Assembly (NCBI RefSeq): GCF_001194135.2
Contig: NC_069007.1
Coordinates: forward strand, 20,614,534 to 20,649,427
Direction of reading: 5' to 3'
DNA length: 34,894 bases
From: Octopus bimaculoides
Taxonomy: Eukaryota
Shown in pieces: positions 12,133 through 34,894 of this stretch (its first letter is position 1; each line of letters opens with the position of its first letter). The position numbers and the translations under genes are program-made. The notes under the pieces are model-generated. The model saw only the letters and a list, made by a program, of their open reading frames with translations, searched no databases and was not told the origin of the DNA.

Positions 12133-12175
<43 letters not shown>

Positions 12176-12928: not shown

Positions 12929-12987
<59 letters not shown>

Positions 12988-13890: not shown

Positions 13891-13964
13891 AAACCCGCTA
13901 AAATTAACGGCCTATTGCCAAAAACGGAAACAATTACAAATATACGTATATGTATCTATATATA

Positions 13965-14327
13965 TTTTTTTTTTTTCTTTTTAATGCGTTTCAGCCAAGT
14001 GGCTGCGGTCATGCTGGTGCACCACCGTGATTTTCACGTTCCTTGCATGGCTCTTCTCCCCCACCCGACATGGTCCAATCAAGAGTTTTGATGGCACATC
14101 TGATGTATAAGAGAATTTGACATAGCTGCCCTAAACTGCGTCTCATTACGAGCAATTGGTTCGTCTGGTATCGTGGAGAGGAAAGCGTCAAGTTTTGTCT
14201 TGAAGACCTCCGCATCCATGTCTTGCATGTCTCTCAAATGTTTTCGCAGGGCATTGAAGAGCTGAGGTCCTCTGAAACCGAGGCTGCTGCAGTATCTCGT
14301 TCTTATGTGAGATGCAGTGGACGGTAC
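13965..14327 (-). mobile_element. 3' end of a CR1/L2-group LINE (Daphne/Crack-like): ORF2 C-terminus, 3' UTR and A-rich tail; 5' part lost in an N-gap
   Basis: Open minus-strand frame 14327-14079, followed by ~100 bp UTR with a terminal stem-loop and an A-rich tail (T-run 13965-13982 on +). Clade assignment is from recalled C-terminal motifs, not a search. Confidence 0.8.
14079..14327 (-). pseudogene. LINE ORF2 (reverse transcriptase protein) C-terminal fragment, 82 codons, not in the supplied ORF track
   Basis: Translates without stops as VPSTASHIRTRYCSSLGFRGPQLFNALRKHLRDMQDMDAEVFKTKLDAFLSTIPDEPIARNETQFRAAMSNSLIHQMCHQNS*. The GPxLFNxL...FKxKLDxFLxxIPDxP...RAAxSNSL pattern is typical of CR1/L2-group ORF2 ends. 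Confidence 0.8.
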
Positions 14328-14610
14328 NNNNNNNNNNNNNNNNNNNNNNNNNNNNNNNNNNNNNNNNNNNNNNNNNNNNNNNNNNNNNNNNNNNNNNNNN
14401 NNNNNNNNNNNNNNNNNNNNNNNNNNNNNNNNNNNNNNNNNNNNNNNNNNNNNNNNNNNNNNNNNNNNNNNNNNNNNNNNNNNNNNNNNNNNNNNNNNNN
14501 NNNNNNNNNNNNNNNNNNNNNNNNNNNNNNNNNNNNNNNNNNNNNNNNNNNNNNNNNNNNNNNNNNNNNNNNNNNNNNNNNNNNNNNNNNNNNNNNNNNN
14601 NNNNNNNNNN

Positions 14611-14652
<42 letters not shown>

Positions 14653-14940
14653 GTATTTCTGAATTTTAATGTGTTTGTGCTCGTAAGTGTGTTCTTTTCA
14701 GTTTTTAATTATCTAAATTCTTCCTCAGAGGAAGGAGCTAGTTTCTAACAACGATACAAGGCTCCATCGTTTGAATGTAGATACAAAAATCTATTTTACA
14801 TTATAAATTTGAGTAAAGTCTCGCATATTTTTACTGCTCCACTTACAGATTGTATTTATAATGTGCGAGTTAGTTGGTCGACTTCTTTTTTCTGAAAAGC
14901 CATCCATATGTATGTATGTATGGAAAAATTTCCAACTTAA

Positions 14941-15040
14941 GCCGAACCGCTAAGTTACAGGGACATAAACACACCAACATAGGTTGTCAAGCGATGGTGG
15001 AGGAACAAGCACAGACACACACACACGCACACACACACAC
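14941..15040 (-). mobile_element. Family B SINE, mid-body fragment with internal (CA)n
   Basis: GCCGAACCGCTAAGTTACAGGGACATAAACACACCAACATAGGTTGTCAAGCGATG matches the octopus SINE body as I recall it; no second copy in the window to confirm. Confidence 0.65.
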
Positions 15041-15080
<40 letters not shown>

Positions 15081-15356
15081 GTATGTGCGTGTCCGTGCTT
15101 GTGTGTTGCGTTCACATTAACACAACATCACGAACACATGAATATACCCAAGAATAGATGGATACATTGACAAATGTAATTCGTCCGGATAAATATACAC
15201 ATACACACACACACATACACTCACATATACATTTTGTGACTATGTCTATCCTTCAATCTGTCTGTCTCTCTATCTATCAGTCTATCGATCACTTATTACC
15301 TGTCAGTTTGCCTACCTGTCTTTCTGTCTAGTTACCTAGCTATTGATCTGTGTGCA

Positions 15357-15397
<41 letters not shown>

Positions 15398-15542
15398 TTG
15401 CGTGTGTGTGTCTGTGTGTATGTATGTGCGTTTGCATGTGCGTAAGTTTGTCGGTGCCTGTCTATGCATTCATGGATATGTATGTATGCATGCATGCATG
15501 TATATATGTATGATGTGTCATTCTACTCGTGTATATGCGTGT

Positions 15543-15575
<33 letters not shown>

Positions 15576-15761
15576 CGTGTGTGTGTGTGCGTGTGTAAAT
15601 GTGTATGTTTGTCGGTGCCTGTCTACATACATGGATGTGTGTTTATAAATATAAATATAAGTGTTTGTGTACGGATGTATACATCCACATATGTATGCTT
15701 CTACATATGTATGTATGTATGTATGTATGTATTTATGTCAAATCATGAACAAAACGTATAG

Positions 15762-15807
<46 letters not shown>

Positions 15808-16547
15808 CCTCTCTCTTTCTCCTTGATGCTTTTCAACTCACCAATTTACTCTTGGTTCCGCCAGCCTCCCTCTGAGCAGTTGTCTGCCAATATCGACACG
15901 CCATCTGTATTGACTATATAAACACTGCCGTTGGGTTTTACCGCATCCTACAGGGACTTTAGGTACACAACCAAGGTACTTGATAACCTTGCAGCAGAAC
16001 ATTCCGTTTACTATGTAATCAACAGGCCATCATTGATGCACACGACTTACTAGAAATAGTAGCTAACATCTTCACCAAATCACAAGCTAGAGTTTTTTTT
16101 CTTCTTTTTGTTTTTTTTTNNNNNNNNNNNNNNNNNNNNNNNNNNNNNNNNNNNNNNNNNNNNNNNNNNNNNNNNNNNNNNNNNNNNNNNNNNNNNNNNN
16201 NNNNNNNNNNNNNNNNNNNNNNNNNNNNNNNNNNNNNNNNNNNNNNNNNNNNNNNNNNNNNNNNNNNNNNNNNNNNNNNNNNNNNNNNNNNNNNNNNNNN
16301 NNNNNNNNNNNNNNNNNNNNNNNNNNNNNNNNNNNNNNNNNNNNNNNNNNNNNNNNNNNNNNNNNNNNNNNNNTATATAAGCCTCTATAGAGGGCGGTTA
16401 AACTCAGGGGTTGCCCCAGGCGGTACACAGTCACTTTCTACTCCATTGAATGTGTCTGTAAATAAGAGAAAATGGTGTCGGTTAGAGCACCTATGATCAT
16501 AAGTTTGCTTCACATCGGCTGATATTGGCTGGTCTGGAAGCACAATA

Positions 16548-16889
16548 CGGGGACCCCCTTCGGTCATGACTGACCATGGGATTGCACCTAGGAAGTTACC
16601 CTCCCAGGCACAAGTCCGGGCAAGGTTGCTTTATGGAGGGCCAGCAGTCGCCCAATGCATACCGGCCTCCCCTCTCCACGCCACCAGTGTTATCCAAGGG
16701 AAAAGCAAAGGGGCCGATACAGCTTGGCACTTGTGACGTCGTAACTCATTTCTACAGCTGAGTGAACTGAAGCAACGTGAAATAAAGTGTCTTGCTAAAG
16801 AACACAACACGCTGCCCAGTCCGGGATTCGAACTCACAACCGCACGATCGCAAGCTCGACGCTCTAACCACTGAGCCATGCACCTTCAC
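16548..16889 (-). mobile_element. Full-length tRNA-derived CORE-SINE (family C)
   Basis: Minus strand: A-box TGGCTCAGTGG (16868-16878), B-box GAGTTCGAATCC (16824-16835), CORE-like TGTGTTCTTTAGCAAGACACTT...CACTCAGCTGTAGAAATGAG, terminal hairpin GGTCA-N4-TGACC (16562-16575). Perfect 12-bp TSD GGAAGCACAATA at 16536-16547 and 16890-16901. Confidence 0.92.
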
Positions 16890-16901
16890 GGAAGCACAAT
16901 A

Positions 16902-17030
16902 ACAATAATGGTGATATAGACTGGGTCCACCACCCTGCATAACACCCCTGTTTGGTCGCTGGGTATGCTTGATAGAACTGCAGGTATTCAGGTCAGGTTG
17001 GCTGACCTTGGGCTTAACAGCAACAACAGT
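16902..17030 (+). repeat. Possible older interspersed-repeat 3' end with an (AAC)n-like tail, interrupted by the family C SINE
   Basis: GC-richer than its flanks and ends in CTTAACAGCAACAACAG; resembles repeats I recall from octopus DNA but cannot name. Confidence 0.3.
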
Positions 17031-17265
17031 GGTGGTAGACTTAATCCGTGGCCCTGCTTAACACCCTAATCTGATTCCATGGGTCTGTTTGGCAGTATTG
17101 CAAGCATTCAGAACAGGTCTCCTGTCTAAAGTTAACTCCGTGTGTCTCACCATCCTTGCTATTGCTTAATCCTCCACTAGGTGGCGTCGTGATGTATCAA
17201 GTTCAATAGATCTGTGAATAGCTTTCAATCGATTATGTGACTACGTACCGTGTTGTTGATCTGTT

Positions 17266-17331
17266 TGTTTGCTCCCGTTGTACGGACTGTTTGCTCCCGT
17301 CGTACGGACTGTTTGCTCCCGTCGTACGGAC
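17266..17331. repeat. 22-bp tandem repeat x3 (TGTTTGCTCCCGTCGTACGGAC)
   Basis: Units at 17266, 17288 and 17310; one mismatch in total. Confidence 0.95.
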
Positions 17332-18643
17332 GCTCGCTTTAAATCGAATCTGGAAAAGAAGCATATTTAGGAAGCAATTGCTCTTAAAAAAACAGCATCT
17401 CGAGGGTCAGAATATATATATACTGAATGCATCCGTGCATTTTGAAAAGAATCGCATTAAAAATACAAAATTCAGAAAAGGAGACACGGGGAACGGAAAC
17501 CCCATAGATAGAAGTAACACGTTCAAATGTCCTCCCTCGTGACCGAGTTTGTCTATTTAGGGTTGATCTCCTTAACCACTCAAGGGGAAAAAGAACCGAA
17601 ACGAGTTAATTAATCCTTGCTACATGAAAGACCATATGTTTACCAATCATGCAATAGATGTTCTCTTTTACTAAAGAGATATGTTTGTACACACACAATG
17701 TCAAAAGTCATGATTCTGCAGTGCATTTAACTGAGAAGAGACGTCTAGGTGAGAAGGGCTGTGATGAAATAAGTAGATCAGCAACTTGGCTACGTAATCT
17801 TTGCTTTGATGGACTGAAGAGAGATGTGGGAGTCCCTAACGGCCCTTTCTACGGTTTCTTGCCTGCTCATCATAGAAGATGAACCCTGTTTCTTTTCCCA
17901 TTACACATTAAAAAATCATAGGTTTGTGTTCACATATTTGTAGTTCTCACACAGCCATACTTTCTATAATCCACGTTGAATTTAGTCCATCAGATTTACG
18001 CTGTGTTCTACAGAAAAAATATATTATTTAATTAATGAGAAGCTGTTAAAAAAAAACAAATATGCAAATCACCTATCCTCTACAGTGATAAACTAATTGA
18101 TGACTGTAGTAACTGATTGATCTATCCTATTGACTGGGGGAGTTTGTCCATAAGATTTCTTTGCTTTCTATGCACAGAAAAGGCTTGGAAGGCATGCGCT
18201 TACCTTCTTATATTTCTATTACAGCTAAGCTCTCTAATATTTAAAATTTATGTTAATCCTCTGATTTACGGTTCTTCAACCGACACTCGACTGACCCTCA
18301 AAAACTCGTGTTAGATCTGGAAAAGCAAAAATTCTGTTAAGAACCTAAAGTAATATTTCGAGTGCCTCTGGCACATCTTTAACAAACTTCGTGACAATTC
18401 TGATGTAGTCAAGTCACTTGAATTCTTCCACCATCGTCATAACTGCGCAACCGTTCGCAGACGTTACCAAAGCTCTCATAATAACTGAATACCGGTAAAT
18501 TGAGAGAAGTGTATTTGTACAGTGACTCAGCAAGCTGGTTACCAATAATCGTCAATTCTGTACGTATTTCCGTTGCATATTATAATCATATCACGTGCAG
18601 TCTATCGTGTATGTATGTATGTATGTATGTATGTATGTATGTA

Positions 18644-18861
18644 CGAAGGGTGCTGAAATGTTCCTCGCTTTGGGTAAAGAAAATACAGGAGAATCAGTTA
18701 ATTATGATTTTAATCAACATATTTCCCGTTCAGGTTCAAACACTTCGTGCAGCGGTCCTTCATTTTTTTTTCTAAGCCCTGTAAAAGAACTCGGAAGGTT
18801 GGGCCTCCAACCAGGCCTTTCGCAACACCCTTGAAGCTAGGAACTTTTCATCACTCCCTCG
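18644..18861 (-). mobile_element. Mariner internal-deletion derivative (MITE-like, 218 bp)
   Basis: TIRs CGAAGGGTGCTGAAATGTTCCTCGCTT (18644-18670) and AAGCTAGGAACTTTTCATCACTCCCTCG (18834-18861), 23/28 complementary. TA on the left, CA (mutated TA) on the right. Minus strand retains GLEKKMKDRCTKCLNLNGKYVD*, like the mariner transposase C-terminus (RWxKCxxxxGxYVE*). Confidence 0.85.
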
Positions 18862-18864
18862 CAT

Positions 18865-18979
18865 GTGTATGTATAAGTGTGTATGTATTTGTGTATGGGT
18901 GAGCGCATACATGTATGAATATATACATATATATCCTCAAACACATACGCACACACACACGGGTAGATATACATATAAG

Positions 18980-19020
<41 letters not shown>

Positions 19021-19280
19021 TCAGACAAACAGAAAGACAACCTGACAAATAGATATTTGTCTATGTATGTATATATGTATGTATGATTGTATGTATATGT
19101 GTGATTGTATATGTGTGTGTATAAGTGTGTATGTATGCATGTATTATGCGTATGATTGTATATATCTGTATATATGTGTATGTATGTGCGTATGTATGTA
19201 TGTATGTATGTATGTATGTGTGTGATTGTATATATGTATGTATGCACGTATACGTACATTGGTCTCTGAAATCGGTAAAC

Positions 19281-19327
<47 letters not shown>

Positions 19328-19330
19328 TGC
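18865..19330. repeat. Compound (TATG)/(TAGA)/(GA) microsatellite field
   Basis: Read directly from the sequence. Confidence 0.9.
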
Positions 19331-19689
19331 AGAGACTCGCCTTGTGTTTTTACAGATGGATAAATAAGAAGTGTATATAAGGGAAAATCATAAACTGAAC
19401 GGCAGAAAGAAAAACACACACAAAAAGCTGCAACTTTAAATTAACAGGATGTTAATGATTATAAGTGGCGGGTTACCTGGTACAATGAAATTTAGCGGGA
19501 TGCAGTTAATTTATATGGAAAGTTGCATGTGTCTGTGCGTGCGCGCGCGCATGTGTGTGTTTGTGTGTGAGTGTCTGTGTGACTGTGTGTGTGTGAATTA
19601 AGGTAGAGCGGTGTACGTATATACACGTGTGCGCTTGCGCGTGTGTGTATGTCTGTGTTTACATATATGTATGTATATATATATGTATA

Positions 19690-19744
<55 letters not shown>

Positions 19745-19885
19745 ATACTTACGTCATATGTATATGTATTTATATATAAATGCATATGTACATACATACA
19801 TGCATGCATGTATATATGCAAATTGCTATAGACATATAAGCAGATATTACGCATATGCATTTAGAAATACACACAGATATATACA

Positions 19886-19994
<109 letters not shown>

Positions 19995-20181
19995 GCATAT
20001 ATATACATGTAATATCTGCATACATGCAGATATATTTTTTTGGCATATGTGTGAGCATATATGTATGTGCGTACACACAAAAGTGAGTGTGTGTGTGTAT
20101 GTGTGTGTATGAACGCATCTATGTGTATTTGCGTTATTTCAGTATCTATTTTTACTATTCTTAAATTAGCGACAAGACGAA

Positions 20182-20213
20182 ACAGGAAGTGCAAAGAGTG
20201 AACCAAGATGGCG
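20182..20213 (+). promoter_or_regulatory. Candidate core-promoter motif pair: ETS site plus YY1 site
   Basis: ACAGGAAGTG (20182-20191) and CAAGATGGCG (20204-20213), 12 bp apart in unique DNA; motif match only. Confidence 0.3.
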
Positions 20214-20906
20214 TTTTAAATTGTTACTATATCATATCGTTTGCGTGTGCGCGTGTGTGTGTGTCGCTGAGTTATCCGGTTTATCTAAATTATTCTCTCA
20301 TTAAGCTATTCTTTTTACTTTCTTATGTATTTCTTTTAAAATATTATAATCAGATTGATATTTCGTTAGTATTTCTTGCAAATCAAGTGACCACGCAGCG
20401 ACGCCGCTCCTTCATCGCTTGACTTGTTAATTGGATGGTGAACGGTTCGGTGGTTGTTTCATTGGGTGGCTGGTTCGTGCGGTGGTTGCCTGGGCGAGTG
20501 GGCGAGTGTTTGGAAACCTAGACTCTATGATTCATTACGTCTTTCCATAATTGTAAGATCGTTCACCCCTGCTCCGATTATATCCTTCATAATTATTATA
20601 CCAACGACGAAAAAATTTTGGGAGTAACAATGAGAAGGCGCACCTGAACATAGGAAAGCACATGCAGTATTATAGGTGCGGCTGGTATGTAGGTGGGCGT
20701 TAAATCCTAACATAAGCCCCTAACACATTCACACGCATATACATGCATACATACATACACACACACACATACATGCATACATATACAAACACACACATAC
20801 ACTCATACACACATCCATACAGAGACAACAGCTTCGACACCTCCTGCTTCTATATCCGGATGACAGATCCACACTTATACCACTAATAATTGGAGAACTT
20901 GGTTTT

Positions 20907-22347
20907 GTAAGTAAATGTACGTGCGTGCGTACGTACGTGCATAAATACGTACGTCCGTACGTAGTAAATACCTACGTGCGTACGTCCGTGCGTGCGTACG
21001 TACGTACGTAAATACGTGCGTACGTACGTGCGTATGAACGTGCAAATATACGTGCGTACGTACGTGCATAGTTACGTAGATACGTACGTCGGTACAAACG
21101 TGAATACGTACGTGCGTATTTACGTGTATACATACATCCGTACGTAGTGCATACATACCAGCGACATTACTGCTTACTTACGTCCGTACGTACGTGCGTA
21201 CGTACATGCATACGTACGTGCATACATACGTGCATACATACGTGCATACATACCTCCGTACGTACCGTGCGAACGTAGGAAGGCACGTACGTGAAAGTAC
21301 GTGCTTACCTACGTAAGTGCATAGGTACGTCCATATGCACGTGAGTACGTACGTACGTGCGTACGTACTTCCATACATAGTGCATACGTACGTGCGTACG
21401 AACGTGTCATCCGTACGTGCGTACGAACGTGCATCCGTACGTGCGTACGTTCGTGCATACGTACGTACGTCAATACGTACGTCCATACGTACGTCCATAC
21501 AAACGTCCAAACAAACATGCATACGTATGTCCGTACGTACGTAAAAACGTACGTGCGTACGTACGTGTGTAAGTACGTAAATACGTACGTGCATACGTAC
21601 GAACGTAGGGCTTATGTACGTGCATACGCACGCACGTACGTAGGAACGTACGTATTGCATACATACGTTCGTACGGACGTACGTACTTCGTGCCTACGTA
21701 CGTACTTCCATACGTACGTACACACCTATGTGCGTACGTATGTCCATACGTACGTTCATACATACGTGCGTACGTACGTAGGGCATATGAACGTGCGTAC
21801 GTACGTCCATACGTACGCACGTAAATACGCACGTATGTACGTACGTACGCATATACGTTTATACGTAAATGCATGCGTACGTACGTGCATACGTACGTCC
21901 GTACTTACCTGCGTGCATACGAAGGTGCATACGTACGGCCGTACGTAGTAAAGACGTACGTGCGTACGTACGTAAATACGCACGTGCGTACGTACGTACA
22001 TACGTGCGTACGTACGTATTGCATACGTACGTTCGTACGGACCTACGTACTTCGTGCACACGAACCTGCGTACGTATGCCCATACGTACGTTCATACGTA
22101 CGTGCGTACGTACGTGAATACGTACGTAGAGCATATGTACGTGCGTACGTACGTCCGTACGTGCATACATACGCACGTATGGACGCAGGTACGTAGGAAC
22201 GTCCTTACGAACGTACGTACGAGTATATGTACGTCTATACGTACGCCCGTACGTATAGCATACGTACGGGCGTACGTTCGTGCCTACGTTCGTGCCTACG
22301 TACGTGCATACGTACGTCCGTATGTACCTGCGTACGTACGTGCATAC
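20907..22347. repeat. Complex (TACG)n-based satellite, left (most diverged) block
   Basis: Continuous TACG/CGTA core with recurrent variant words (GTGCGTAC, GTAAATAC, GTCCGTAC, GCATAC, GGGCATATG). Begins abruptly at GTAAGTAAAT (20907) after unique DNA. Confidence 0.95.
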
Positions 22348-23415
22348 TGATGCGACCACCGAAAATACAGTTGGCATTATATCCCTATCTCCCGGGCTGG
22401 GTTTTGAACCCGTACTCTGGTCAGTTGGGGACAATGGTATTTCCTTTGTCTCGTCGGCAACCACAGCTATTTTTAGCGTAGCTGCCCCCTTTCCGGTCAC
22501 CGAAAGTTCAGCAGGACAGGAATTGGCGGGAAGCAGTCGGCCGAAGCAGTGAGCAGAGAATTTTGGCCAGTGGAGTTCTGGCAGCCAGCAGAGGCAGTCG
22601 AGCGGTAGCAGCCAGCCGAGGCAGTTGGGGGACAGCAGTTTGCCCGTGGAGATGGAGCCAGTCGAAGAGAGAAAGTTATGGTCAGCAGAAACGCATAGAG
22701 TCCCAGAGAGAGAGGGACAGAGAGATGAAGCAGTTGTACAGAGATGAAGATGAAGAATTATAAGTCTGACAGAGAGAAAGATATGGTCAGCAGAAATGCA
22801 TAGAGTCCCAGAGAGAGAGAGAGGGACAGAAAGACGGAATTGTAGTGGCAGACTGCCTTGGTCAGTGGAAGTAGCAGACCTGAACGAAACGAACTTCGTT
22901 GTGGTAAATGCTTTTATATTATTTTAAAGAAAAAGAACTCTGAGTTGTTAACTGTGTCGTTGTAAATGCTTCTAAAACAAAGGAAAAGAAAAGGAATACA
23001 AAAGAAAGAAGCAGAAGAACTTTGTTGTCAAATGAAAACTTGAGACACGAATTTGCGATGTAAAAATGATTGAAAAGCTTATAATTGTTTGGAAACTTTG
23101 TGAACGGTATTGAACTGTCATGCCACGTATTGGAATTGTTATTATGTAATGCTCTATTCTAATGTTCTAAATGTATTCTGTGATGTTATGTATGTAAAAT
23201 GAAAAGGTTACCCAACGCATGGTCTTCGTGTTCTTTCTTCCTCCCCTCCTTTTGCCTGTGTTGTTCTTCGTTACGTGCTCCAGCCGGGGCTTTATTATCG
23301 GTCAGGGTGACCGACAGACGAGTTGCTAGCTCACTGAGCGAGTACGAACATTCGCGCGTGCGCGAGCCCCCTATTCGGTGTTAAGGTGGTGCTTCGCGTG
23401 CGGGCGTTCGTAACA
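22348..23415. mobile_element. Solo LTR (probably Ty3/Gypsy) inserted in the satellite
   Basis: 1068 bp of non-satellite sequence starting TGATGCGA and ending TCGTAACA (TG...CA; terminal 8-mers inverted at 6/8). Flanked by 4-bp direct repeat ATAC (22344-22347, 23416-23419). Internal 56/58-bp direct repeat. No PBS, PPT or coding region seen; orientation not resolved. Confidence 0.8.
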
Positions 23416-26400
23416 ATACGTACGTAAGTAGGACATATGTACGTTCGTACGTACGTACGTGCATACGTACGAACATACGTACGCACGTACGTAGGAAAGT
23501 CCGTACATATTGCATACGTACGTTCGTACGGACGTACGTAATTCGTGCATACGTAAGTACAAACGTGCGTACAGACGTACGCACGTGTGTACGGACGGAC
23601 GGACGTGCGTACGGACCGACGTACGTGCTTACGGATGTACGTTCTTACATAAGTACGTCCGTACGTATCAGCGAGCGGACGTGCGTCCGAAAGTGTATGC
23701 GTACGTGAAGATGTACGTGCGTACGTACGTTAATACGTACGTAAATACGTACGTAAATACGTGAGTACGTACGTAAATACGATCGTACGTACGTAAATAC
23801 TTACGTGCGTACGTAAAAACGTACATGCGTACGTACGTAATTCCGTACGAGCGTACGTACGTGCGTGCCAACAAAGGTAAATATGTACGTGCATACGCAC
23901 GTACGTCGGGCATTTGTACGTGCACGCAAACGTCCGTACGTACGTGCACACGAACGTACTGTATACGTACGTCCGTACGTGATGCAAACGTAATTCATGC
24001 ATACGTCCGTACGTACCTGCGTGCGTACGAACGTGCGTACGTACGGAAATACGTACGTGCATGAGTACGAGCATACGTACGTACGTACGGCATATGTACG
24101 TGCGTACGGACGTACGTACGTGCATACGTACATGTATACGTACGTACGTAGGGCATATGTACGTGCGTACGTACGTCCATACGTACGTCCATACGTACGT
24201 GCATACGTACGTACGCACGTACGTAGGAACGTACGTACATATTGCATACGTACGTTCGTACGGAAGTACGTTCGTACGGACGTAGGTTCGTAAGTACGTT
24301 TGTGCAAACGTACGTGCGCATGTACGTTCATATGTACTTCCATACGTACGCACGTACGTTGGAAACTCCGCACGAGTATACTACGTCCGTACGTGTATAC
24401 GTACGTCTGTACGTGTATACGTACGTCCGTACGTGTATACGTACGTCCGTACGTGTATACGTACGTCCGTACGTAAGGCAAACGTACGTTCATGCATACG
24501 TCCGTACGTAACTGCGTGCGTACGTACGTGCATACGTACGTACGACATATATCCGTGCGTACGTACATCCATACGTACGAACGTACGCACGTACGTACGA
24601 ACCTCCGTATGTATTGCATACCTAGGTTCGTACGGACTTACGTAATTCGTGCATACGTTAGCACGTGCGTACGGAAGTACGTACGTGCTTACAGACGTAC
24701 TTTCGTGCATACGTACGTCTGTACGTACCTGCGTCCGGACGTAATACGTCCGTCCGTACATACGTAAAGACGTACGTTCGTACGTACATAAATACGTGCG
24801 TACGTACTTAAATACGTCCGTACGTACGTAAATACCTACGTGCGTACTTAAACACTATGTGCGTACGTAAAAACGTACGTACGTGCGTGCGAACGTACGT
24901 AAATATGTACGTGCATAAGTGTATGCGTACATCCGAACGTACGTACGTAAATACGTAAGTGCGTACGTACGAAAATACGTGAGTACGTACGTAAATTAGT
25001 GCGTGCGTACGTCAAAACGTACGTACGTAAATAGTACGTGCGTACGTACGTAAATAGTACGTGTGTACGAACGTTAATACGTACGTGCGTACGTACGTAA
25101 ATACTTACATGTGTACGTACGTAAACACGTGCGTACGTAAGTAAATACGTACGTAGGTACGTAAATACTTACGTGCGCACGTTTTTACAGACGCACGCAC
25201 GTATTTACGTACGTACGCACGTACGTATTTACTTACGTACGTTCGGATGTACGTACGTACGTACGTTTTTAGGTAAGCACATACGTGTTTACGTACGCTC
25301 GTAGGTATTTACGTACGTACGCACGTACTTAAGTACGGACGCACGTATACACGTTCGGCCGAAGGTACGTACGGACGTACGTATGCACGTATATATGCCC
25401 TACTTACGTACGTATGCACGTACGTACGCACGTAAGTATTTACGTACGTGCGCTCGTATCTACGTGCGCACGCAGGTATTTACGTGTTTACGTACGAATT
25501 TACGTGCATATGCACGTATTTACGTACATAAACACGTATTTAAGTACGCACGCACGTATTTACGTACGCATGCACGTACATATGCCCAACGTACGTACGT
25601 ATGCATGTACATATTTACGTACGTTCGGACGCACGATTTTACGTACGCACGTAAGTATTTACGTACATACGCACGTATTTACGTACGTACGCACGTACTT
25701 ATTTACGTACTTACGAACGTACGTCTTTATGTACGTACGGACGTACGTATACACGATCGGACGCACGTCCGCACGCAGGTACTTACGGACGTACGTATGT
25801 AAGAACGTACTATGCAAGAACGTACGTCCGTACGCACGTACGTAAGCACGTCCGTACGTCCGAACGCATGCACAAACGTCAGTACGCACGTACGAAAGTC
25901 TGCACGCACGTACGAACGTACGTATGCATGAATTACGTACGTCCGTATGAACGTGCGTACGTACGAGCGTGCGTATGCACGTACGTACGTATTTACGTAC
26001 GTACGCACGTACTATTTACGTACGTACGCTCGTACTATTTACGTACGTACGTACGCACATACTATTTACGTACGTACGCACATACTATTTACGTACGTAC
26101 GTTTTTACGGACGAACGTACGTATTTACCTACGTACGCACGCACTAATTTACGTACGTACGCACGTATCTACGAACGAACGCCCGTACGTATTTACTTAC
26201 GTACGTCCGGATGTACGTATACCCGTATGCACGTACATATTTACGTACGTTCGCACGAACGTACGTACGTATGTACGTTTTTACGTACGCACATACGTGT
26301 TTACGTACGCACGTAGGTATTTACGTACGTACGCACGTATTTAAGTACGTACGCACGTATTTACGTACGCACGAACGTAAGTCTTTACGTATGTACCGTC

Positions 26401-29400
26401 GAACGTATACACGTTGGGACGCAGGTACGTACGGACGTACGTATGCACGTACTTATTTATGTAAGTACGTACATACGTATTTACGTACATGCGCACGTAT
26501 TTAAGTACGTACGCACGTATTTACGTACGCATGCACGTACATATGCCCCACGGACGTCCGTATGCACGTAATATTTACGTACGTTCGCACGCACGTTTTT
26601 ACGTACGCACGTAAGTATTTACGTACGTACGCACGTATTTACGTACGTACGAACGTAAGTTCGGACGCACGTCCGCACGCAGGTACGTACTGACGTACGT
26701 ATGTAAGAACGTACGTACGTCCGTACGCACGTACGTACGTCCGTACGCACGTACGTACGTCCGTATGTCCGCAAGCATTTACAAACGTCCGTACACACGT
26801 ACGAATGTCTGTACGCACGTACGTATGCATGAATTACGTACCTCTGTACGAACGTACGGACGTTCCGACGTACGTGCGTACGTAGGTGCGTACGTACGGA
26901 CGTAGGTGCGTACGTACGGACGTACGTATGTACGTACATATGCCCTACTTACGTACGTATGCAAGTATTTATTTACGTAAGTACGCTTTTACGTACGCAC
27001 GTAGGCATTTACGTACGTGCGCATGTATTTGCGTACGTACGCACGTGTTTACGGACGTACGCACGTAAGTATTTACGTACGTACGCACGTACGTATTTAC
27101 GTACGTACGCACGTACTATTTACGTACGCACGCACGTACTATTTACGTACGTACGATTGTACGGACGCACGTACGTATTTACGTACGTATGCACGCACTA
27201 ATTTACGTACGTACGCACGTATTTACGTACGTACGCACGTACGCACGTACTATTCACGTACGTACGAACGTACTATTTACGTACGTACGTTTTTACGGGC
27301 GCACGTACGTATTTACGTACATACGCACGCACTAATTTACGCACGTACGCAGTATTTACGTACGTACGTACGCACGTATTTACGTACGTACGCACGTACG
27401 TATTTACGTACGTTCGCACGTACGTATTTACGTACGTACGCACGAACTATTTGCGTACGTACGTTTTTACGGACGCACGTAGGTATTTACGTACGTACGC
27501 ACGTATTTAGATACGTACGCACGTATTTATGTAAGTACGAACGTACGTCTTTACGTATGTACGGACGCACGTATACACGTTCGGACGCAGGTATGTACGG
27601 GCGTACGTATGGACGTACATATGCCGTAATTACGTACGTATGCACGTACGTAAATACCTACGTGCGTACGTAAGAGTGTACGTAAGTGCGTACGTACGTA
27701 CTTACGTAAAGAAATACGTGAATACATACGTAAGTTGGGCATATGTACGTGCATACGTACGTCCGTACGTGCATACGCACGCTCGAACGTACGCACCTAC
27801 GTACGCACGTACGTAGGGACGTCCGTACGTTCGTACAGACGTGCATGCGAACGTAAGTAAGTATTACGTGCATACGGATGTACGTCGGGCATATGTACGT
27901 GCAAGCGTACGTAAATACGTGCGTGCGCACGTAAATACGTACGTACGCACGTAAATACGTACGTACGCAAATACTTCCGCACGTACGTGCGTACTTACGT
28001 AAATAAGTACGTGCATACGTACGTCCGTACGTACCTGGGTCCGAACGTGTATACGGGCGTCCGTACATACGTAAAGACGTACGTTCGTACGTACGTAAAT
28101 ACGTTTGCACGCACGTTTTTACGTACGCACGTAAGTATTTACGTACGTACGCACGTATTTACGTACGTACGCACGTACTTATTTACGTACTACGAACGTA
28201 CGTCTTTACGTCCGTACGTATAAACGATCGGACGCACGTCCGCACGCAGGTACGTACGGACGTACGTATGCACGATCGAATGTACGTCCGTACGCATGCA
28301 CAAACGTCCGTACGAACGTACGTATGCATGAATTACGTACGTCCGTATGAACGTACGTCCGTATGAACGTACGTACGTGCTACGTAGGTGCGTACGTACG
28401 TTCATACGGACGTACGTAATTCATGCATACGTACGTTCGTACGTACGTGCAGACATTCGTACGCGCGTACGGACGTTTGTGCATGCGTACGGACGTACGT
28501 TCGTGCTTACGGACGTACGTAAATACGTGCGTACGTACTTAAATACGTGTGTATGTACGTAAATACGTGCATACGCAGGTAAATTCGTGCGTACACATTT
28601 AAATACGTTCGTACGCACGTAAATACGAGCGCACGTACGTAAATACGTACGCGCGTACGTACGTGTGTACTTACGTAAATAATTACGTGCATACGTACGT
28701 AAGTCGGGCATATATACGTGCATACGTACGTCCGTACGTACCTGTGTCCGAACGTGTATACGTGCGTTCGTACATACGTAAAGACGTACGTAAATACGTG
28801 CGTACGTACGTAGACACGAACGTGCGTACGTAAACACGTATGTGCGTACGTAAAAACGTACGTACGTACGTACGTGCGAACGTACGTAAATATGTACGAG
28901 CATAAGTGTATACGTACATCCGAACGTATGTAAGTAAATACGTACGTGCGTACGTACGTAAATTAGTGCGTGCGTACGTACGGGCGTCCGTAGAAACGTA
29001 CGTACGTAAATAGTACGTGCGTACGTACGTAAATAGTACGTGCGAACGTACGTAAATAGTACGTGCGTACGTACGTAAATAGTACGTGCGTACGTACGTA
29101 AATACATGCGTACGTACGTAAATACGTACGTGAGTCCGTAAAAACGTACGTAAATAGTACGTGCGTACGTACATAAATAGTACGTATGTACGTACGTAAA
29201 TACGTACGTGCGTACGTACGTAAATACGTACTTGCGTACGTACGTAAATATTTACGTGCGTACGTACGTAAATACTTGCGTACGTACGTAAGTTAGTGCT
29301 TACGGACGTACGTACGTGCGTTCGGACGTATGTACGTTCGTTCATACGTACGTCCGTACGTACCTGCGTGCGGACGTACGTCCGATCGTGCATACGTACG

Positions 29401-32400
29401 TCCGTACGTACGTAAAGACGTACGTTCTTACGTACGTAAATAAGTACGTGCGTACGTACGTAAATACTTACGTGCGTACGTAAAAACGTGCGAGCGAACG
29501 TACGTAAATATGTACAGGCATACGTACTTACGTCGGCCATATGTACATCGGAACGTACGTAAGTAAATACGTACGTGATTACGTACGTAAATACGTGCGT
29601 ACGTACGTAAATACGTACGTGCGTCCGTAAAAACGTACGTACGCACGTACGTAAATACGTACGGTCGTCCTTGAAAACTACGTGCGTACCTACGTAAATA
29701 CTTACGTGCGTACGTACGTAAACACGTGCGTACGTTCCTAAATACGTTCGTACGTACGTAAATATTTACGTGCGTACGTAAGAACGTGTGTGCGAACGTA
29801 CGTAAATATGTACATGCATACGTACGTACGTCACGCATATGTACGTGCATGCGTACGTAAATACGTGCGTACGTACTTAAATATGTGTGTATGTACGTAA
29901 ATACGTGCGTACGCACGTAAATACGTACGTAACTAGGGCATATGTACGTGCATAAGTGTATACGTACATCCGAATGTACGTAAGTAAATACGTACGTGCG
30001 TACGTACGTAAATACGTACGTGCGTACGTACGTAAATATGTGCGTAAGTACGTAAATACATGCGTACGTACGTAAATACGTACGTGAGTCCGTAAAAACG
30101 TACGTAAATAGTACGTGCGTACGTACATAAATAGTACGTACATACGTACGTAAATACGTACTTGCGTACGTACGTAAATATGTGCGTACGTACGTAAATA
30201 CATGGGTACGTACGTAAATACGTACGTGAGTCCGTGAAAACGTACGTAAATAGTACGTGCGTACGTACATAAATAGTACGTATGTACGTACGTAAATACG
30301 TACGTGCGTACGTACGTAAATACGTACGTGCGTACGTACGTAAATACTTACGTGCGTACGTACGTATGTACGTAAATTAGTGCGTGCGTACGTACGTAAA
30401 TACGTACGTGCGTCCGTAAAAACGTACGTACTTAAATAGTACGTGCGTACGNNNNNNNNNNGTACGTGCGTACGTACGTAAATACGTACGTGCGTACGTA
30501 CGTAAATACTTACGTGCGTACGTACGTATGTACGTAAATTAGTGCGTGCGTACGTACGTAAATACGTACGTGCGTCCGTAAAAACGTACGTACTTAAATA
30601 GTACGTGCGTACGTACGTAGATACGTGTGTACGTACGTACGTAAATACGTGCGTACGTACGTGAATTAGTGCGTGCGTACGTACGTAAATACGTACGTGC
30701 GTCCGTATAAACGTAGGTACGTAAATAGTACGTGCGTACGCACATAAATACGTGCGTACGTACGTAAATACGTGCGTGCGTCCATGAAAACGTACGTACG
30801 TAAATAGTACGTGCGTACTTACGTAAATAGTACGTGCGAACGAACGTAAAAACGTACGTGCGTACATACGTAAATACGTGCGTACGTAAATTAGTGCGTG
30901 CGTACGTACGTAAATACGTACGTGCGTCCGTGTAAACGTACGTACGTAAATAGTACGTGCGTACGTACGTAAATACGTACTTGCGTCCGTACGTAAATAC
31001 TTACATGCGTACGTACGCAAATACGTGCGCACGTACGTAAATACCTACGTGCGTACGTAAGAGTGTTCGTACGTGCGTACTTACGTAAATAAATACGTGC
31101 ATACATACGTAAGTTGGGCATATATACGTGCATACGTACGTCCGTACGTGCATACGCACGCTCGTACGTACGCACCTACAAACGTACGTAAACCATGCAT
31201 ATGTACGTACGTACGTGCGTACAGACATTCGTACGTGCGCACGTTTGTACATGCGTAAGGACGACCTTACCGACGGACGTACGTGCGTCTGGACGTACAT
31301 ACGTTCTTGTATACTACGTCCGTGCGTACATGCGTGCGGACGTGCGTCCGATCGTGTCTACGTGCGTTCGTACGTACGTAAATAGGTACGTGCGTACNNN
31401 NNNNNNNNNNNNNNNNNNNNNNNNNNNNNNNNNNNNNNNNNNNNNNNNNNNNNNNNNNNNNNNNNNNNNNNNNNNNNNNNNNNNNNNNNNNNNNNNNNNN
31501 NNNNNNNNNNNNNNNNNNNNNNNNNNNNNNNNNNNNNNNNNNNNNNNNNNNNNNNNNNNNNNNNNNNNNNNNNNNNNNNNNNNNNNNNNNNNNNNNNNNN
31601 NNNNNNNNNNNNNNNNNNNNNNNNNNNNNNNNNNNNNNNNNNNNNNNNNNNNNNNNNNNNNNNNNNNNNNNNNNNNNNNNNNNNNNNNNNNNNNNNNNNN
31701 NNNNNNNNNNNNNNNNNNNNNNNNNNNNNNNNNNNNNNNNNNNNNNNNNNNNNNNNNNNNNNNNNNNNNNNNNNNNNNNNNNNNNNNNNNNNNNNNNNNN
31801 NNNNNNNNNNNNNNNNNNNNNNNNNNNNNNNNNNNNNNNNNNNNNNNNNNNNNNNNNNNNNNNNNNNNNNNNNNNNNNNNNNNNNNNNNNNNNNNNNNNN
31901 NNNNNNNNNNNNNNNNNNNNNNNNNNNNNNNNNNNNNNNNNNNNNNNNNNNNNNNNNNNNNNNNNNNNNNNNNNNNNNNNNNNNNNNNNNNNNNNNAACG
32001 TACGTACGTAAATAGTACGTGCGTACGTACGTAAATAGTCCGCGCGTACGTACGTAAATGCGTACGTGCGTACATACGTAAATACGTGCGTACGTACGTA
32101 CGTATATAGGTGCGTACGTACGTAAATTAGTGCGTGCGTACGTGCGTGCTTACGTACGTAAATATGTACGTGCATACGTTTATACGTACAGGCGAACGTA
32201 CGTAAGTAAATACGTACGTAAGTAAATACATGCGTACGTACGTAAATACATGCGTACGTACGTAAATTAGTGCGTGCGGACGTACGTAAATACGTACGTG
32301 CGTCCGAAAAAACGTACGTAAATAGTACGTGCGTACGTACATAAATAGTACGTACGTGCGTACGTACGTAAATACGTACGTGCGTACATACGTAAATACT

Positions 32401-34894
32401 TACGTGCGTATGTACGTAAATACGTGCGTACGTACTTAAATTAGTGCGTGCGTACGTAAATTAGTGCGTGCGTACGTACGTAAATANNNNNNNNNNGCTT
32501 ACGTACGTAAATACGTGCGTACGTACGTAAATTAGTGCGTGCGTACTTACGTAAATACGTACGTGCGTCCATGAAAACGTACTACGTAAATAGTACGTGC
32601 GTACGTACGTAAATAGTACGTGCGTACGTACGTAAATAGTACGTGCGTACGTACGTAAATACGTACGTGCGTACGTACGTAAATACGTACGTGCGTCCGT
32701 AAAAATGTAGGTACGTAAATAGTACGTGCTTACATACGTAAATACGTGCGTACGTACGTAAATTAGTGCGTGCGTACGTACGTAAATACGTACGTGCGTC
32801 CATGAAAACGTACGTACGTAAATAGTACGTGCGTACGTACGTAAATAGTACGTTCGTAGGTACGTAAATAGTACGTGCGTACGTACGTAAATAGTACGTG
32901 CGTACGTACGTAAATACTTACGTGCGTACGTACGTAAATATGTGCGTACGTACGTAAATACATGCGTACGTACGTAAATTTATGCGTGCGTACGTACGTA
33001 AATACGTACGTGCGTCCGTAAAAACGTAAGTAAATAGTACATGCGTACGTACATAAATAGTACGTATGTACGTACGTAAATACGTACGTAAATACTTACG
33101 TGCGTACGTACGTAAATACGTACGTGCGTTCGTAAGAACGTACGTACTTAAATAGTACGTGCGTACGTACGTAGATACGTGCGTACGTACGTACGTACGT
33201 AAATACGTGCGTACGTACGTACGTAAATACGTGCGTATGTACGTGAATTAGTGCATGCGTACGTACGTAAATTAGTGCGTGCGTACGTAAATTAGTGCGT
33301 GCGTACGTACGTAAATACGTACGTGCGTTCGTAAAAACGTACGTACTTAAGTAGTACGTGCGTACGTACGTGCGTACGTACGTACGTACGTACGTAAATA
33401 CGTGCGTACGTACGTACGTACGTAAATACGTGCGTACGTAAGTGAATTAGTGCGTACGTACGTAAATACGTACGTGCGTCCGTAAAAACGTTGGTACGTA
33501 AATAGTACGTGCGTACGTACGTAAATATGTGCGTACGTACGTAAATACATGCGTACGTNNNNNNNNNNCGTGCGTACGTACGTAAATATGTGCGTACGTA
33601 CGTAAATACATGCGTACGTACGTAAATTAATGCGTGCGTACGTACGTAAATACGTACGTGCGTCCGTAAAAACGTAAATAAATAGAACATGCGTACGTAC
33701 ATAAATATTACGTACGTACGTAAATACGTACGTAAATACTTACGTGCGTACGTACGTAAATACGTACGTGCGTTCGTAAAAACGTACGTACTTAAATAGT
33801 ACGTGCGTACGTACGTAGATACGTGCGTACGTACGTAAATACGAGCGTACGTACGTACGTAAATACGTGCGTACGTACGTGAATTAGTGCGTGCGTACGT
33901 ACGTAAATACGTACGTGCGTCCGTAAAAACGTAGGTACGTAAATAGTACGTGCTTACGTACGTAAATACGTGCGTACGTACGTAAATTAGTGCGTGCGTA
34001 CGTACGTAAATACGTGCGTACGTACGTGAATTAGTGCGTGCGTACGTACGTAAATACGTACGTGCGTCCGTAAAAACGTAGGTACGTAAATAGTACGTGC
34101 TTACGTACGTAAATACGTGCGTACGTACGTAAATTAGTGCGTGCGTACGTACGTAAATACTACGTGCGTCCGTAAAAACGTAAGTACGTAAATAGTACGT
34201 GCGTACGTTTATACGTACAGACGAACGTACGTAAGTAAATACGTACCTGCGTACGTACGTAAATATGTGCGTACGTACGTAAATACATGCGTAAGTACGT
34301 AAATTAGTGCGTGCGGACGTACGTAAATACGTACGTGCGTCCGTAAAAACGTACGTAAATAGAACGTGCGTACGTACATAAATAGTACGTACGTACGTAA
34401 ATACGTACGTGCGTACGTAAATACGTACGTGCGTACATACGTAAATACTTACGTGCGTACGTACGTAAATACGTGCGTACGTAAGTAAATTAGTGCGTGC
34501 GTACGTAAATTAGTGCGAGCGTACGTACGTAAATACGTACGTGCGTTCGTAAAGACGTACGTACTTAAATAGTACGTGCGTACGTACGTACGTACGTGCG
34601 TACATACGTACGTACGTAAATACGTGCGTACGTACGTGAATTAGTGCGTGCGTACATACGTAAATACGTACGTGCGTCCGTAAAAACGTTAGTACGTAAA
34701 TAGGACGTGCGAACGTACGTAAATACGTGCTTACGTACGTAAATATGTGCGTACGTACGTGAATTAGTGCGTGCGTACGTACGTAATGAGTCCATGAAAA
34801 CGTACGTACGTAAATAGTACGTGCGTACTTACGTAAATGGTACGTGCGTACGTACGTAAATACGTACGTGCGTACGTACGTAAATTAGTGCGTC
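23416..34894. repeat. Complex (TACG)n-based satellite, main block with internal inversions (runs off the window end)
   Basis: Same vocabulary as the left block. Polarity words GTAAATAC/GTGCGTAC versus their reverse complements GTATTTAC/GTACGCAC alternate in blocks. Four N-gaps inside. Confidence 0.95.
24381..24474. repeat. 20-bp tandem sub-repeat (GTACGTCCGTACGTGTATAC) x4.7 within the satellite
   Basis: Units start at 24381, 24401, 24421, 24441 and 24461 (partial); two single-base variants. Confidence 0.95.

What the first reader, a model, noticed from the sequence alone, without database searches (positions are those of the whole stretch)
25171..28443. Satellite polarity flips four times, pivoting on palindromic words
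Using the polar words GTAAATAC/GTGCG (F) versus GTATTTAC/CGCAC (R), the blocks are F 20907-25176, R 25177-~27648, F ~27649-~28103, R ~28104-~28376, F ~28377-end. The first F-to-R switch sits on the perfect 12-bp palindrome ACGTGCGCACGT (25171-25182); the second sits at ACGT (28101-28104). Inference: because every ACGT/GTAC is a palindrome, the array offers dense microhomology for strand-switching during replication or repair, making it a self-inverting satellite.
Basis: partly seen in the sequence, partly recalled or inferred. Interest (0 to 1): 0.72.

Follow-up and report, generated by a model that had tools for sequence, protein, structure and literature searches.

The report
Inverted blocks inside an ACGT-based satellite
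A tandem-repeat array built on the self-complementary word ACGT holds a cleanly inverted 2.5-kb block and a small hairpin-like inverted duplication; strand switches like these are already well known in other satellites, and no sequencing reads were available to prove these ones are real.

Summary
Three independent measures place polarity switches at about 25176, 27641-27648, 28100-28104 and 28377-28400. The "pivot on palindromic words" part carries no weight. The array has 105 perfect 12-bp palindromes in 13.4 kb, and 49% of its bases lie inside ACGT or GTAC. ACGTGCGCACGT also occurs twice in unflipped sequence.

The flips lie in a diverged domain (23417 to about 29920) organised as a higher-order repeat of roughly 1 kb. 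J1 and J2 are best read as one balanced in-place inversion of 25177-27641. Flipping it back restores native repeat sequence at both ends. The exchange sits in a 7-bp inverted core (TACGTGC / GCACGTA), and the J1 palindrome is a product of that join. J3 and J4 are a different event: a roughly 290-bp inverted fragment that forms a palindrome with the next forward segment (arms 81/82 identical, 35-bp spacer). Flipping it does not restore native order.

Inverted microhomology of at least 7 bp is about 45 times denser here than in the flanking DNA. No read data were available, so an assembly artefact remains possible (about 0.25). A palindromic k-mer mis-join is excluded. This is a new member of a known kind, of modest interest.

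The parts
20907..22344 (+). Degenerate (ACGT)n-derived satellite, forward polarity, left sub-array
   Evidence: TRF period 4; polar words; log-odds map
22345..23417 (.). 1,073-bp non-satellite insert that splits the array; both flanks are forward
   Evidence: Sequence read directly; no satellite k-mers
23417..25176 (+). Forward copies of the roughly 1-kb higher-order repeat (F-left). The last ~60 bp carry the rare marker GCGTACGTAAG at 25131
25170..25182 (.). J1: forward-to-reverse junction. The 7-bp exchange core TACGTGC (25170-25176) runs into GCACGT, giving the 12-bp palindrome ACGTGCGCACGT (25171-25182)
25177..27641 (-). Reverse block: 2,465 bp, about 2.6 higher-order units, read as one segment inverted in place
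   Evidence: flipping it back restores native sequence at both ends
27636..27648 (.). J2: reverse-to-forward junction ACGTAT|GCACGTA, the reciprocal copy of the 7-bp core (GCACGTA 27642-27648)
27642..28104 (+). Forward block, paralogous to the uninterrupted copy at 31035-31260 (183/199)
28100..28104 (.). J3: forward-to-reverse junction with 5-bp microhomology TACGT
   Evidence: Alignment to paralogues 24679-24841 and rc 26261-26478
28100..28393 (-). Small reverse block, 276/291 identical to 25600-25990 of the long reverse block. Its last 35 bp (28359-28393) are the normal continuation of the unit and act as the palindrome spacer
28277..28503 (.). J4 palindrome: arms 28277-28358 and 28394-28503 (81/82 identical, plus one 28-bp indel in the right arm), 35-bp spacer
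   Evidence: DNA hairpin -76.7 kcal/mol, z = -15
28394..29920 (+). Forward higher-order repeat copies (F-right). 28715-28787 is a 96% direct copy of 28008-28084
29920..34894 (+). Mostly the homogeneous 20/23-bp monomer array (consensus CGTACGTACGTAAATACGTG), forward throughout with no flips. It includes a partial forward higher-order copy at 31015-31397 and four N gaps
31015..31066 (+). Uninterrupted forward paralogue of the y-site (AAATACGTGC|GCACGTACGTAAATACC...), used as the 'empty site'

Best explanation
The window holds a eukaryote-type satellite derived from (ACGT)n. Its older, diverged part (23417 to about 29920) is organised as a higher-order repeat of roughly 0.95-1.17 kb. Two separate rearrangements in that part produce the four polarity switches.

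Event 1 (J1 + J2) is a balanced, in-place inversion of 2,465 bp (25177-27641). The two breaks lie after ACGTGC in two different repeat units: the x-site ACGTGC|ATACGT and the y-site ACGTGC|GCACGT. The strands were exchanged within a 7-bp inverted identity (TACGTGC / GCACGTA) with no bases gained or lost. The 12-bp palindrome at J1 is the automatic product of joining the two half-sites head to head.

Event 2 (J3 + J4) is a fold-back or template-switch type inverted duplication. A roughly 290-bp reverse fragment was laid down next to a forward copy of the same segment. This made a palindrome with 82-bp arms and a 35-bp spacer, and it was accompanied by a direct duplication of the neighbouring segment.

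Shown: the anatomy, the restoration of native sequence on flipping event 1, the near-identity of the J4 arms, and the enrichment of inverted microhomology. Inferred: that the junctions exist in the organism, and that the molecular route was recombination or end-joining on short inverted identity for event 1 and replication template switching or hairpin-primed synthesis for event 2. Palindromic words matter only in that a satellite made of self-complementary words gives every direct repeat some inverted homology. No particular palindrome acts as a pivot.
For: Polarity blocks are confirmed three ways.

Event 1. After reverse-complementing 25177-27641, the left join aligns without a break to native copies (F 28560-28800, 159/190; rc 25340-25520, 132/165). 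The right join aligns to F 30930-31140 (172/203), with exact identity across ACGTGC|GCACGTACGTAAATACCTACGTGCGTACGTAAGAGTG. The rare word GCGTACGTAAG (6 copies in the window) lies 45 bp left of J1. After flipping, GGCATAT follows 17 bp to the right, giving a spacing of 63 bp against 66 and 74 bp in intact units. The 7-bp core is present at both junctions. The chance of a core this long for random breakpoint pairs is 3.1%.

Event 2. The arms are 81/82 identical while ordinary paralogues are about 91% identical. The hairpin folds at -76.7 kcal/mol, z = -15. The flanking direct copies are 96% identical. Two paralogues (24780|24781 and 26341|26340) lack the 690-bp block 28104-28794.

Against artefact. 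Copies differ by substitutions and indels that are often multiples of 4 bp, not by the 1-bp indel noise of raw long reads. No reverse segment is an exact mirror of a neighbour; the longest exact inverted repeat near the junctions is 50 bp. Sequence shared across the junctions is only 5-12 bp, too short for any exact-overlap assembler to join without a real read. The same pipeline left a 152-bp exact overlap unmerged at the 10-N gap 30452-30461, so it does not merge contig ends aggressively.

Strand switches of this kind are documented in human HSat3, beta-satellite and diverged alpha-satellite.
Against: No reads or independent assembly could be consulted (metagenome scans empty). The scaffold is a gapped draft with a demonstrable assembly flaw 2 kb away.

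A misoriented contig would give exactly the same balanced signature as event 1.

The array is about 70-75% self-complementary everywhere. As a result, a generic 90-mer spanning test does not separate flipped from as-assembled junctions, and the left half of the x-site reconstruction rests on generic monomers plus one rare marker.

A clean insertion of the reverse block at ACGTGCGCACGT^ACGTAAATACC also fits the y-side.

The origin of the small reverse block is ambiguous. Its best match is the long reverse block in the same orientation, not the adjacent forward copy.
Confidence: 0.6

Rival explanations
1. Assembly artefact. The reverse blocks are real satellite sequence put in the wrong orientation or place. 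Possible routes are a misoriented contig whose flanking gaps were closed, gap-filler output in a repeat, or a false reverse-complement overlap between noisy long reads, which is plausible because the array is about 70-75% self-complementary.
For: The scaffold has 13 N gaps. The 10-N gap at 30452-30461 is flanked by a 152-bp exact duplicate, which is an unmerged overlap. A balanced flip is exactly what a misoriented contig looks like. Any reverse-complement alignment in the array reaches 70-75% identity. No read support could be checked.
Against: There are no Ns at or near J1-J4; the contig runs uninterrupted from 16374 to 30451. Sequence shared across the junctions is only 5-12 bp, so a k-mer or exact-overlap assembler needs real junction reads. 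J4 has a non-palindromic 35-bp spacer and arms that differ by a 28-bp indel, unlike a contig-plus-own-reverse-complement artefact or a missed-adapter read. Differences between copies are substitutions and often multiple-of-4-bp indels, not long-read noise. Flipping J3/J4 does not restore native order (and the manual comparison), so that block is not a simple misorientation.
Confidence: 0.25
2. The satellite is intrinsically self-inverting: palindromic words such as ACGTGCGCACGT and ACGT are the pivots, and flips recur at them throughout the array by strand switching during replication or repair.
For: Inverted microhomology of at least 7 bp is about 45 times denser in the array than in the flank. 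The J1/J2 exchange lies in a 7-bp inverted core and at the centre of a pre-existing 12-bp palindrome at the y-site. J3 lies on TACGT.
Against: Palindromes are so dense that any breakpoint would sit on one. The other two copies of ACGTGCGCACGT (31023, 31233) are not switch points. The homogeneous 20-bp array has the densest microhomology (4.2%) and no flips in about 4.3 kb. Only two events are needed to explain the four switches. J4 has at most 3 bp of exact microhomology, by manual comparison with paralogues using the sequences.
Confidence: 0.1
3. Other histories. One is two nested inversions (outer J1-J4, inner J2-J3). Another is that the long reverse block is a clean insertion of an inverted copy (template-switch insertion or re-integrated satellite circle) at ACGTGCGCACGT^ACGTAAATACC.
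For: Nested inversions give the + - + - + pattern. The joined flanks F-left + F-right align to the intact copy at 30710-31244 (415/544). Windows of the reverse block have their best matches at mirrored, collinear positions in F-right.
Against: The nested model leaves at least two of its four reconstructed joins in an unnatural unit order (manual reconstruction). The insertion model needs two successive unit starts 64 bp apart (GCGTACGTAAG at 25131 and 27664), which the intact copy lacks. The mirrored similarity is equally explained by an older tandem duplication of a two-unit block once the reverse block is flipped back.
Confidence: 0.05

Closest known systems
Strand switches (inversion breakpoints) inside human satellite arrays: HSat3 on chr9, beta-satellite, diverged alpha-satellite (Altemose et al., bioRxiv 10.1101/2021.07.12.452052; 10.64898/2026.07.22.740206)
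   Same: The same repeat family lies on both sides of a breakpoint in opposite orientation. Switches are concentrated in older, diverged parts of arrays and are rare in homogeneous parts. They are interpreted as by-products of array turnover.
   Different: Here the monomer derives from a self-complementary tetramer, so forward and reverse copies are already about 70% alike. The scale is kilobases, not megabases. The human cases are validated by long reads and population data; this one is not.
Balanced inversion by exchange between short inverted repeats or microhomology (two-break rejoining or short-homology recombination)
   Same: Reverse-complementing the segment restores native sequence at both ends, no bases are gained or lost, and a 7-bp inverted identity sits at both junctions.
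   Different: The inverted repeat is not a dedicated element. It is the quasi-palindromic monomer itself. No enzyme or pathway can be assigned from sequence.
Fold-back or short-inverted-repeat-mediated palindromic duplication (breakage-fusion-bridge junctions, yeast and Tetrahymena palindrome formation; reviewed in PMC7999016, PMC3834830) and DUP-TRP/INV-DUP template-switch rearrangements (from my own knowledge: Carvalho et al. 2011)
   Same: J4 has two near-identical inverted arms separated by a short non-palindromic spacer (35 bp). There is a forward-reverse-forward arrangement with a duplicated forward segment (96%), and short microhomology at the switch points.
   Different: The arms are only about 82-110 bp before homology is lost, not chromosome-scale. 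There is no evidence of a dicentric or of amplification. The small reverse block's best match lies 2.5 kb away in the same orientation.
Assembly palindrome artefacts (de Bruijn hairpins at palindromic k-mers; missed-adapter or fold-back chimeric long reads)
   Same: Polarity reverses inside a contig of a draft assembly.
   Different: Those artefacts give zero-spacer, 100% identical arms running out from the pivot. Here no arm mirrors its neighbour exactly, the pivot palindromes are at most 12 bp, and J4 has a 35-bp asymmetric spacer and a 28-bp indel between arms.

Membership tests
Satellite-array strand switch (as in HSat3, beta-satellite, diverged alpha-satellite) | The same repeat family lies on both sides of the breakpoint, in opposite orientation | tested here: met
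   Polar-word bins, dot plots, an independent log-odds map and higher-order repeat alignments
Satellite-array strand switch (as in HSat3, beta-satellite, diverged alpha-satellite) | The breakpoint is confirmed by spanning long reads or independent assemblies | not testable with these tools
Balanced in-place inversion (J1+J2) | Reverse-complementing the segment restores native, collinear sequence at both ends | tested here: met
   Flipped x-site 159/190 and y-site 172/203 against native copies, spanning the joins; marker spacing 63 bp against 66/74 bp. Caveat: a generic 90-mer test does not discriminate
Balanced in-place inversion (J1+J2) | No net gain or loss of sequence, and a reciprocal junction pair | tested here: met
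   J1 = x-left + core + rc(y), and J2 is its exact reciprocal within the 7-bp core TACGTGC/GCACGTA
Balanced in-place inversion (J3+J4) | Reverse-complementing the segment restores native unit order | tested here: not met
   Flipping 28104-28393/28400 gives unnatural unit order at both joins (paralogue alignments)
Fold-back / short-spacer palindromic inverted duplication (J4) | Near-identical inverted arms with a short non-palindromic spacer | tested here: met
   Arms 28277-28358 and 28394-28503 are 81/82 identical with one 28-bp indel; the spacer is 35 bp; hairpin z = -15
Fold-back / short-spacer palindromic inverted duplication (J4) | Extra copy relative to paralogous units (duplication, not mere inversion) | tested here: met
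   The 690-bp block 28104-28794 is absent from F-left (24780|24781) and from the reverse block (26341|26340). The flanking direct copies are 96% identical
De Bruijn palindromic k-mer mis-join | A palindromic (k-1)-mer at the pivot (about 20 bp or more) and perfectly mirrored arms with no spacer | tested here: not met
   Pivot palindromes are at most 12 bp. The longest exact inverted repeat at a junction is 50 bp, around a 35-bp spacer
Missed-adapter or fold-back chimeric long-read artefact | Arms mirror each other continuously outward from the pivot; 1-bp indel noise in the consensus | tested here: not met
   Arm homology at J4 ends after about 82-110 bp. The phases at J1-J3 are offset. Copy differences are substitutions and often multiple-of-4-bp indels
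Site-specific invertible switch (invertase with defined inverted-repeat sites) | A recombinase gene and dedicated inverted repeats flanking the segment | tested here: not met
   There are no credible ORFs in or near the array. The only shared sequence is a 7-bp core common to the monomers

The most novel reading that the evidence does not exclude
Satellites derived from a self-complementary word such as ACGT may form a distinct class in which every direct repeat is also a weak inverted repeat. Balanced inversions and fold-back duplications would then arise at a much higher rate than in ordinary satellites. The 2,465-bp inversion, exchanged within a 7-bp core at the centre of a native 12-bp palindrome, would be a caught example. 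Strand orientation in such arrays would be intrinsically unstable.
Probability: 0.15. Interest if true: 0.55.

Novelty: new member of a known kind. Interest (0 to 1): 0.3.

Why it matters
If the junctions are real, this locus resolves satellite inversions to the base, with both reciprocal junctions and an intact paralogous site available. Few satellite strand switches have been described at that resolution. It shows a balanced exchange within only 7 bp of inverted identity, next to a fold-back duplication of a different type. It also gives a measurable quantity: inverted microhomology is about 45 times denser than in ordinary DNA. That number could be used to test whether self-complementary satellites invert more often than others. 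If the junctions are artefacts, the case is a useful warning that quasi-palindromic satellites can look rearranged in draft assemblies. Either way the general phenomenon is already known, so the value is illustrative rather than conceptual.

Tried and rejected
- Independent copies: exact-pattern scans of metagenome contigs for the J1 junction word and for a two-monomer consensus found nothing.
- Organism identification: Rfam and ARAGORN found nothing, and there are no credible coding ORFs. A protein search with a SINE-like ORF gave no hits. The organism remains unknown. An invertebrate origin is only my guess, from the SSR-rich sequence and the tRNA-derived SINE-like element.
- Self-BLAST: a sensitive blastn with word size 14 timed out, and megablast missed known similarities. 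I replaced both with k-mer dot plots and sliding local alignments.
- Loose reverse-complement alignments around the junctions and the repeat finder were uninformative, because any part of the array is 70-75% complementary to itself.
- A 90-mer spanning-alignment test of flipped against as-assembled junctions did not discriminate.
- Rejected models: a simple 26-bp target-site duplication around the reverse block (it is monomer periodicity); clean insertion of the reverse block (less parsimonious); nested inversions J1-J4 / J2-J3 (unnatural joins); one large palindrome centred on J2 (the mirrored similarity is explained by an older two-unit tandem duplication once the block is flipped back); and J1 and J3 as copies of one ancestral junction (their similarity is at background level, about 80%).
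- Literature searches for an (ACGT)n/TACG satellite found nothing relevant.


Full report
**What the window is.** The window is a gapped scaffold with 13 runs of N and 14 contigs. It is very rich in microsatellites and has no credible genes, no tRNA genes and no Rfam matches. From 20907 to the end it carries a satellite derived from (ACGT)n. TRF reports period 4 at only 61-65% matches. In the right-hand part it reports a 20-bp unit, CGTACGTACGTAAATACGTG. All four junctions of the finding lie inside one uninterrupted contig, 16374-30451.

**Check of the observation.** So does a 16-mer dot plot against the sequence itself and against its reverse complement. A strand score built from 6-mer log-odds, learned only on 31997-34894 and therefore independent of the region under test, places change points at 25172, 27644 and 28099, with a minimum at 28304.

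Two details need correction. First, the last reverse block extends by homology to about 28393-28400. Second, short "forward" blips inside the long reverse block (about 25947 and 26867-26907) are a normal part of the repeat unit, so the polar words are not strictly polar.

**Are the pivot palindromes meaningful?** No. The array contains 105 perfect 12-bp palindromes in 13.4 kb (7.9 per kb), and 49% of its bases lie within ACGT or GTAC. The median distance from any base to the nearest ACGT is 3 bp. ACGTGCGCACGT itself recurs at 31023 and 31233 inside unflipped forward sequence. Any breakpoint in this array would "sit on a palindrome".

**Internal organisation.** I ran sliding 120-bp local alignments on both strands. 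They show that 23417 to about 29920 is not a simple monomer array but a higher-order repeat of roughly 0.95-1.17 kb with recognisable segments. These include a unit start ACGTAAATACC...GCGTACGTAAG...GGCATAT and a GAATTACG segment, among others.

- Forward copies lie at 23417-25176, 27642-28104 and 28394 to about 29920, with a partial copy at 31015-31397.
- Reverse copies lie at 25177-27641 (about 2.6 units) and 28100-28393 (about 0.3 unit).
- Copies on opposite strands are about 91% identical (689/753), the same as copies on the same strand (470/516).
- Differences between copies are mainly substitutions, plus indels that are often multiples of 4 bp. They are not the single-base indel noise of an unpolished long-read consensus.

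**Junctions J1 and J2.** I compared the flanks with an uninterrupted forward paralogue at 31015-31066. I then reverse-complemented 25177-27641 in a script.

After flipping, the left join reads ...GTAAATACTTACGTGC|ATACGTACGTAATTACGGCATATG.... It aligns across the join to native copies: F 28560-28800 at 159/190, and rc 25340-25520 at 132/165. The right join reads ...CTGTAAAAACGTGC|GCACGTACGTAAATACCTACGTGCGTACGTAAGAGTG.... It aligns to F 30930-31140 at 172/203, with exact identity across the join.

The rare word GCGTACGTAAG has six copies in the window and marks the unit start. It lies 45 bp left of J1. After flipping, GGCATAT follows 17 bp to the right, so the spacing is 63 bp, against 66 and 74 bp in intact units.

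The simplest reading is one balanced in-place inversion whose two breaks both follow ACGTGC. The sequences around the x-site and the reverse complement of the y-site share the exact 7-mer TACGTGC. J1 (AAATACT-TACGTGC-GCACGTTTTT) and J2 (CGTACGTAT-GCACGTA-CGTAAATA) are exact reciprocal products of an exchange inside that core. The y-site was already the native palindrome ACGTGC|GCACGT. The palindrome now at J1 is made of x-left plus the reverse complement of y-left, so it is a consequence of the join, not evidence of a special pivot.

An alternative is a clean insertion of the reverse block at ACGTGCGCACGT^ACGTAAATACC. It also fits the right side. However, it requires two unit starts 64 bp apart, which the intact copy does not have.

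One caveat applies. Because the array is quasi-palindromic, a generic 90-mer spanning test cannot separate flipped from as-assembled junctions. The argument therefore rests on unit-specific markers and on the longer alignments.

**Junctions J3 and J4.** At J3 the forward homology to the paralogues 24679-24841 and rc 26261-26478 ends at 28104. The reverse homology starts at 28100, leaving the 5-bp overlap TACGT. The small reverse block matches 25600-25990 of the long reverse block in the same orientation (276/291).

At J4 the reverse unit continues normally for 35 bp (28359-28393). A homologous stretch follows the same segment at about 26860-26900. The sequence then turns into the reverse complement of the segment just read. 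The arms are 28277-28358 and 28394-28503. They are 81/82 identical apart from one 28-bp stretch present only in the right arm. That is far above the roughly 91% typical of paralogues. As single-stranded DNA the region folds into a hairpin of about 58 bp at -76.7 kcal/mol (z = -15 against shuffles).

Two paralogues pass straight from the position equivalent to 28104 to the position equivalent to 28794 (24780|24781 and 26341|26340). The 690 bp between are therefore extra. They are bounded by direct copies that are 96% identical (28008-28084 and 28715-28787).

Flipping the small block does not restore native unit order (and inspection). A nested-inversion history (outer J1-J4, inner J2-J3) leaves unnatural joins. 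This event is therefore an inverted duplication of the fold-back or template-switch kind, not an inversion.

**Does the array favour such events?** For random pairs of positions I measured the exact inverted identity covering the putative exchange point. A core of at least 7 bp occurs with probability 3.1% in the higher-order domain, 4.2% in the homogeneous 20-bp array and 0.07% in the non-satellite flank. Inverted microhomology is thus about 45 times denser than in ordinary DNA. The 7-bp core of event 1 is also longer than expected for random breaks (p about 0.03).

Against a strong "self-inverting" claim, all switches lie in the diverged domain and none in the homogeneous array. The same pattern is described for human satellites, where inversions accumulate in diverged alpha-satellite and are virtually absent from homogeneous arrays, and where HSat3 and beta-satellite carry hundreds of strand switches.

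The question cannot be settled here. The assembly is imperfect nearby: the 10-N gap at 30452-30461 is flanked by a 152-bp exact duplicate, which is an unmerged contig overlap.

The following points speak for real junctions:

- There are no Ns at the junctions.
- Only 5-12 bp are shared across them, so any k-mer or exact-overlap assembler needs genuine junction-spanning reads.
- J4 has an asymmetric spacer and an indel between its arms.
- There are no exact mirror copies.
- The variation between copies is of the substitution type.
- The pipeline evidently does not merge ends on short overlaps.

A misoriented contig for event 1, or a false reverse-complement overlap of noisy long reads, is not. 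I put the artefact at about 0.25.

**Comparison with what is known, and verdict.** The closest known systems are:

- strand switches in satellite arrays;
- balanced inversions through short inverted identity;
- fold-back or short-inverted-repeat palindromic duplications (PMC7999016 and PMC3834830, found);
- DUP-TRP/INV-DUP template-switch rearrangements (from my own knowledge).

What is particular here is the self-complementary origin of the monomer and the base-level view of both reciprocal junctions. This is a new member of a known kind.

Noticed in passing
window 30300-30613: The 10-N gap at 30452-30461 is flanked by a 152-bp exact direct duplicate (30300-30451 = 30462-30613). This is an unmerged contig overlap, so the gap is false and the sequence is duplicated.
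   Followed up: yes
window 32235-32688 and 33298-33968: The other two 10-N gaps in the array (32487-32496, 33559-33568) also have strong direct matches between their flanks (scores 116 and 148). These matches are not flush with the gap. They may be overlaps or just array periodicity.
   Followed up: partly
window 22345-23417: A 1,073-bp non-satellite insert splits the array. It has a tRNA-like 'GGGTTTTGAACCC' stretch near its left end and AG-rich internal repeats (27-bp unit at 22581-22638). The satellite is forward on both sides. It looks like a non-autonomous mobile element.
   Followed up: no
window ~16560-16885 (minus strand): A tRNA-derived SINE-like element (GGCTCAGTGGTTAGAGCG...GGTTGTGAGTTCGAATCCCGG...). 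ARAGORN calls no tRNA, and a protein search with its ORF found nothing.
   Followed up: partly
window 23417-29920 versus 29920-34894: The satellite has two states. One is an old, diverged domain with a higher-order repeat of about 1 kb. The other is a homogeneous 20/23-bp monomer array with long exact repeats (for example 164 bp at 33850/33997, i.e. a 147-bp super-period, and 93 bp at 29094/30048).
   Followed up: partly
window 31023 and 31233: Two further copies of the 12-bp palindrome ACGTGCGCACGT lie in forward context. The region 31150-31240 has a few reverse-type words, but these are a normal part of the unit and not a flip.
   Followed up: yes
window 1044-16373: Most sized N gaps abut microsatellites. 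For example, 5344-5765 lies inside (AT)n and 3496-3705 inside (TG)n. The gaps therefore mark SSRs that the assembler could not cross.
   Followed up: no
window 17266-17331: A 22-bp unit (TGTTTGCTCCCGTCGTACGGAC) repeated three times at 97% identity in otherwise unique sequence.
   Followed up: no
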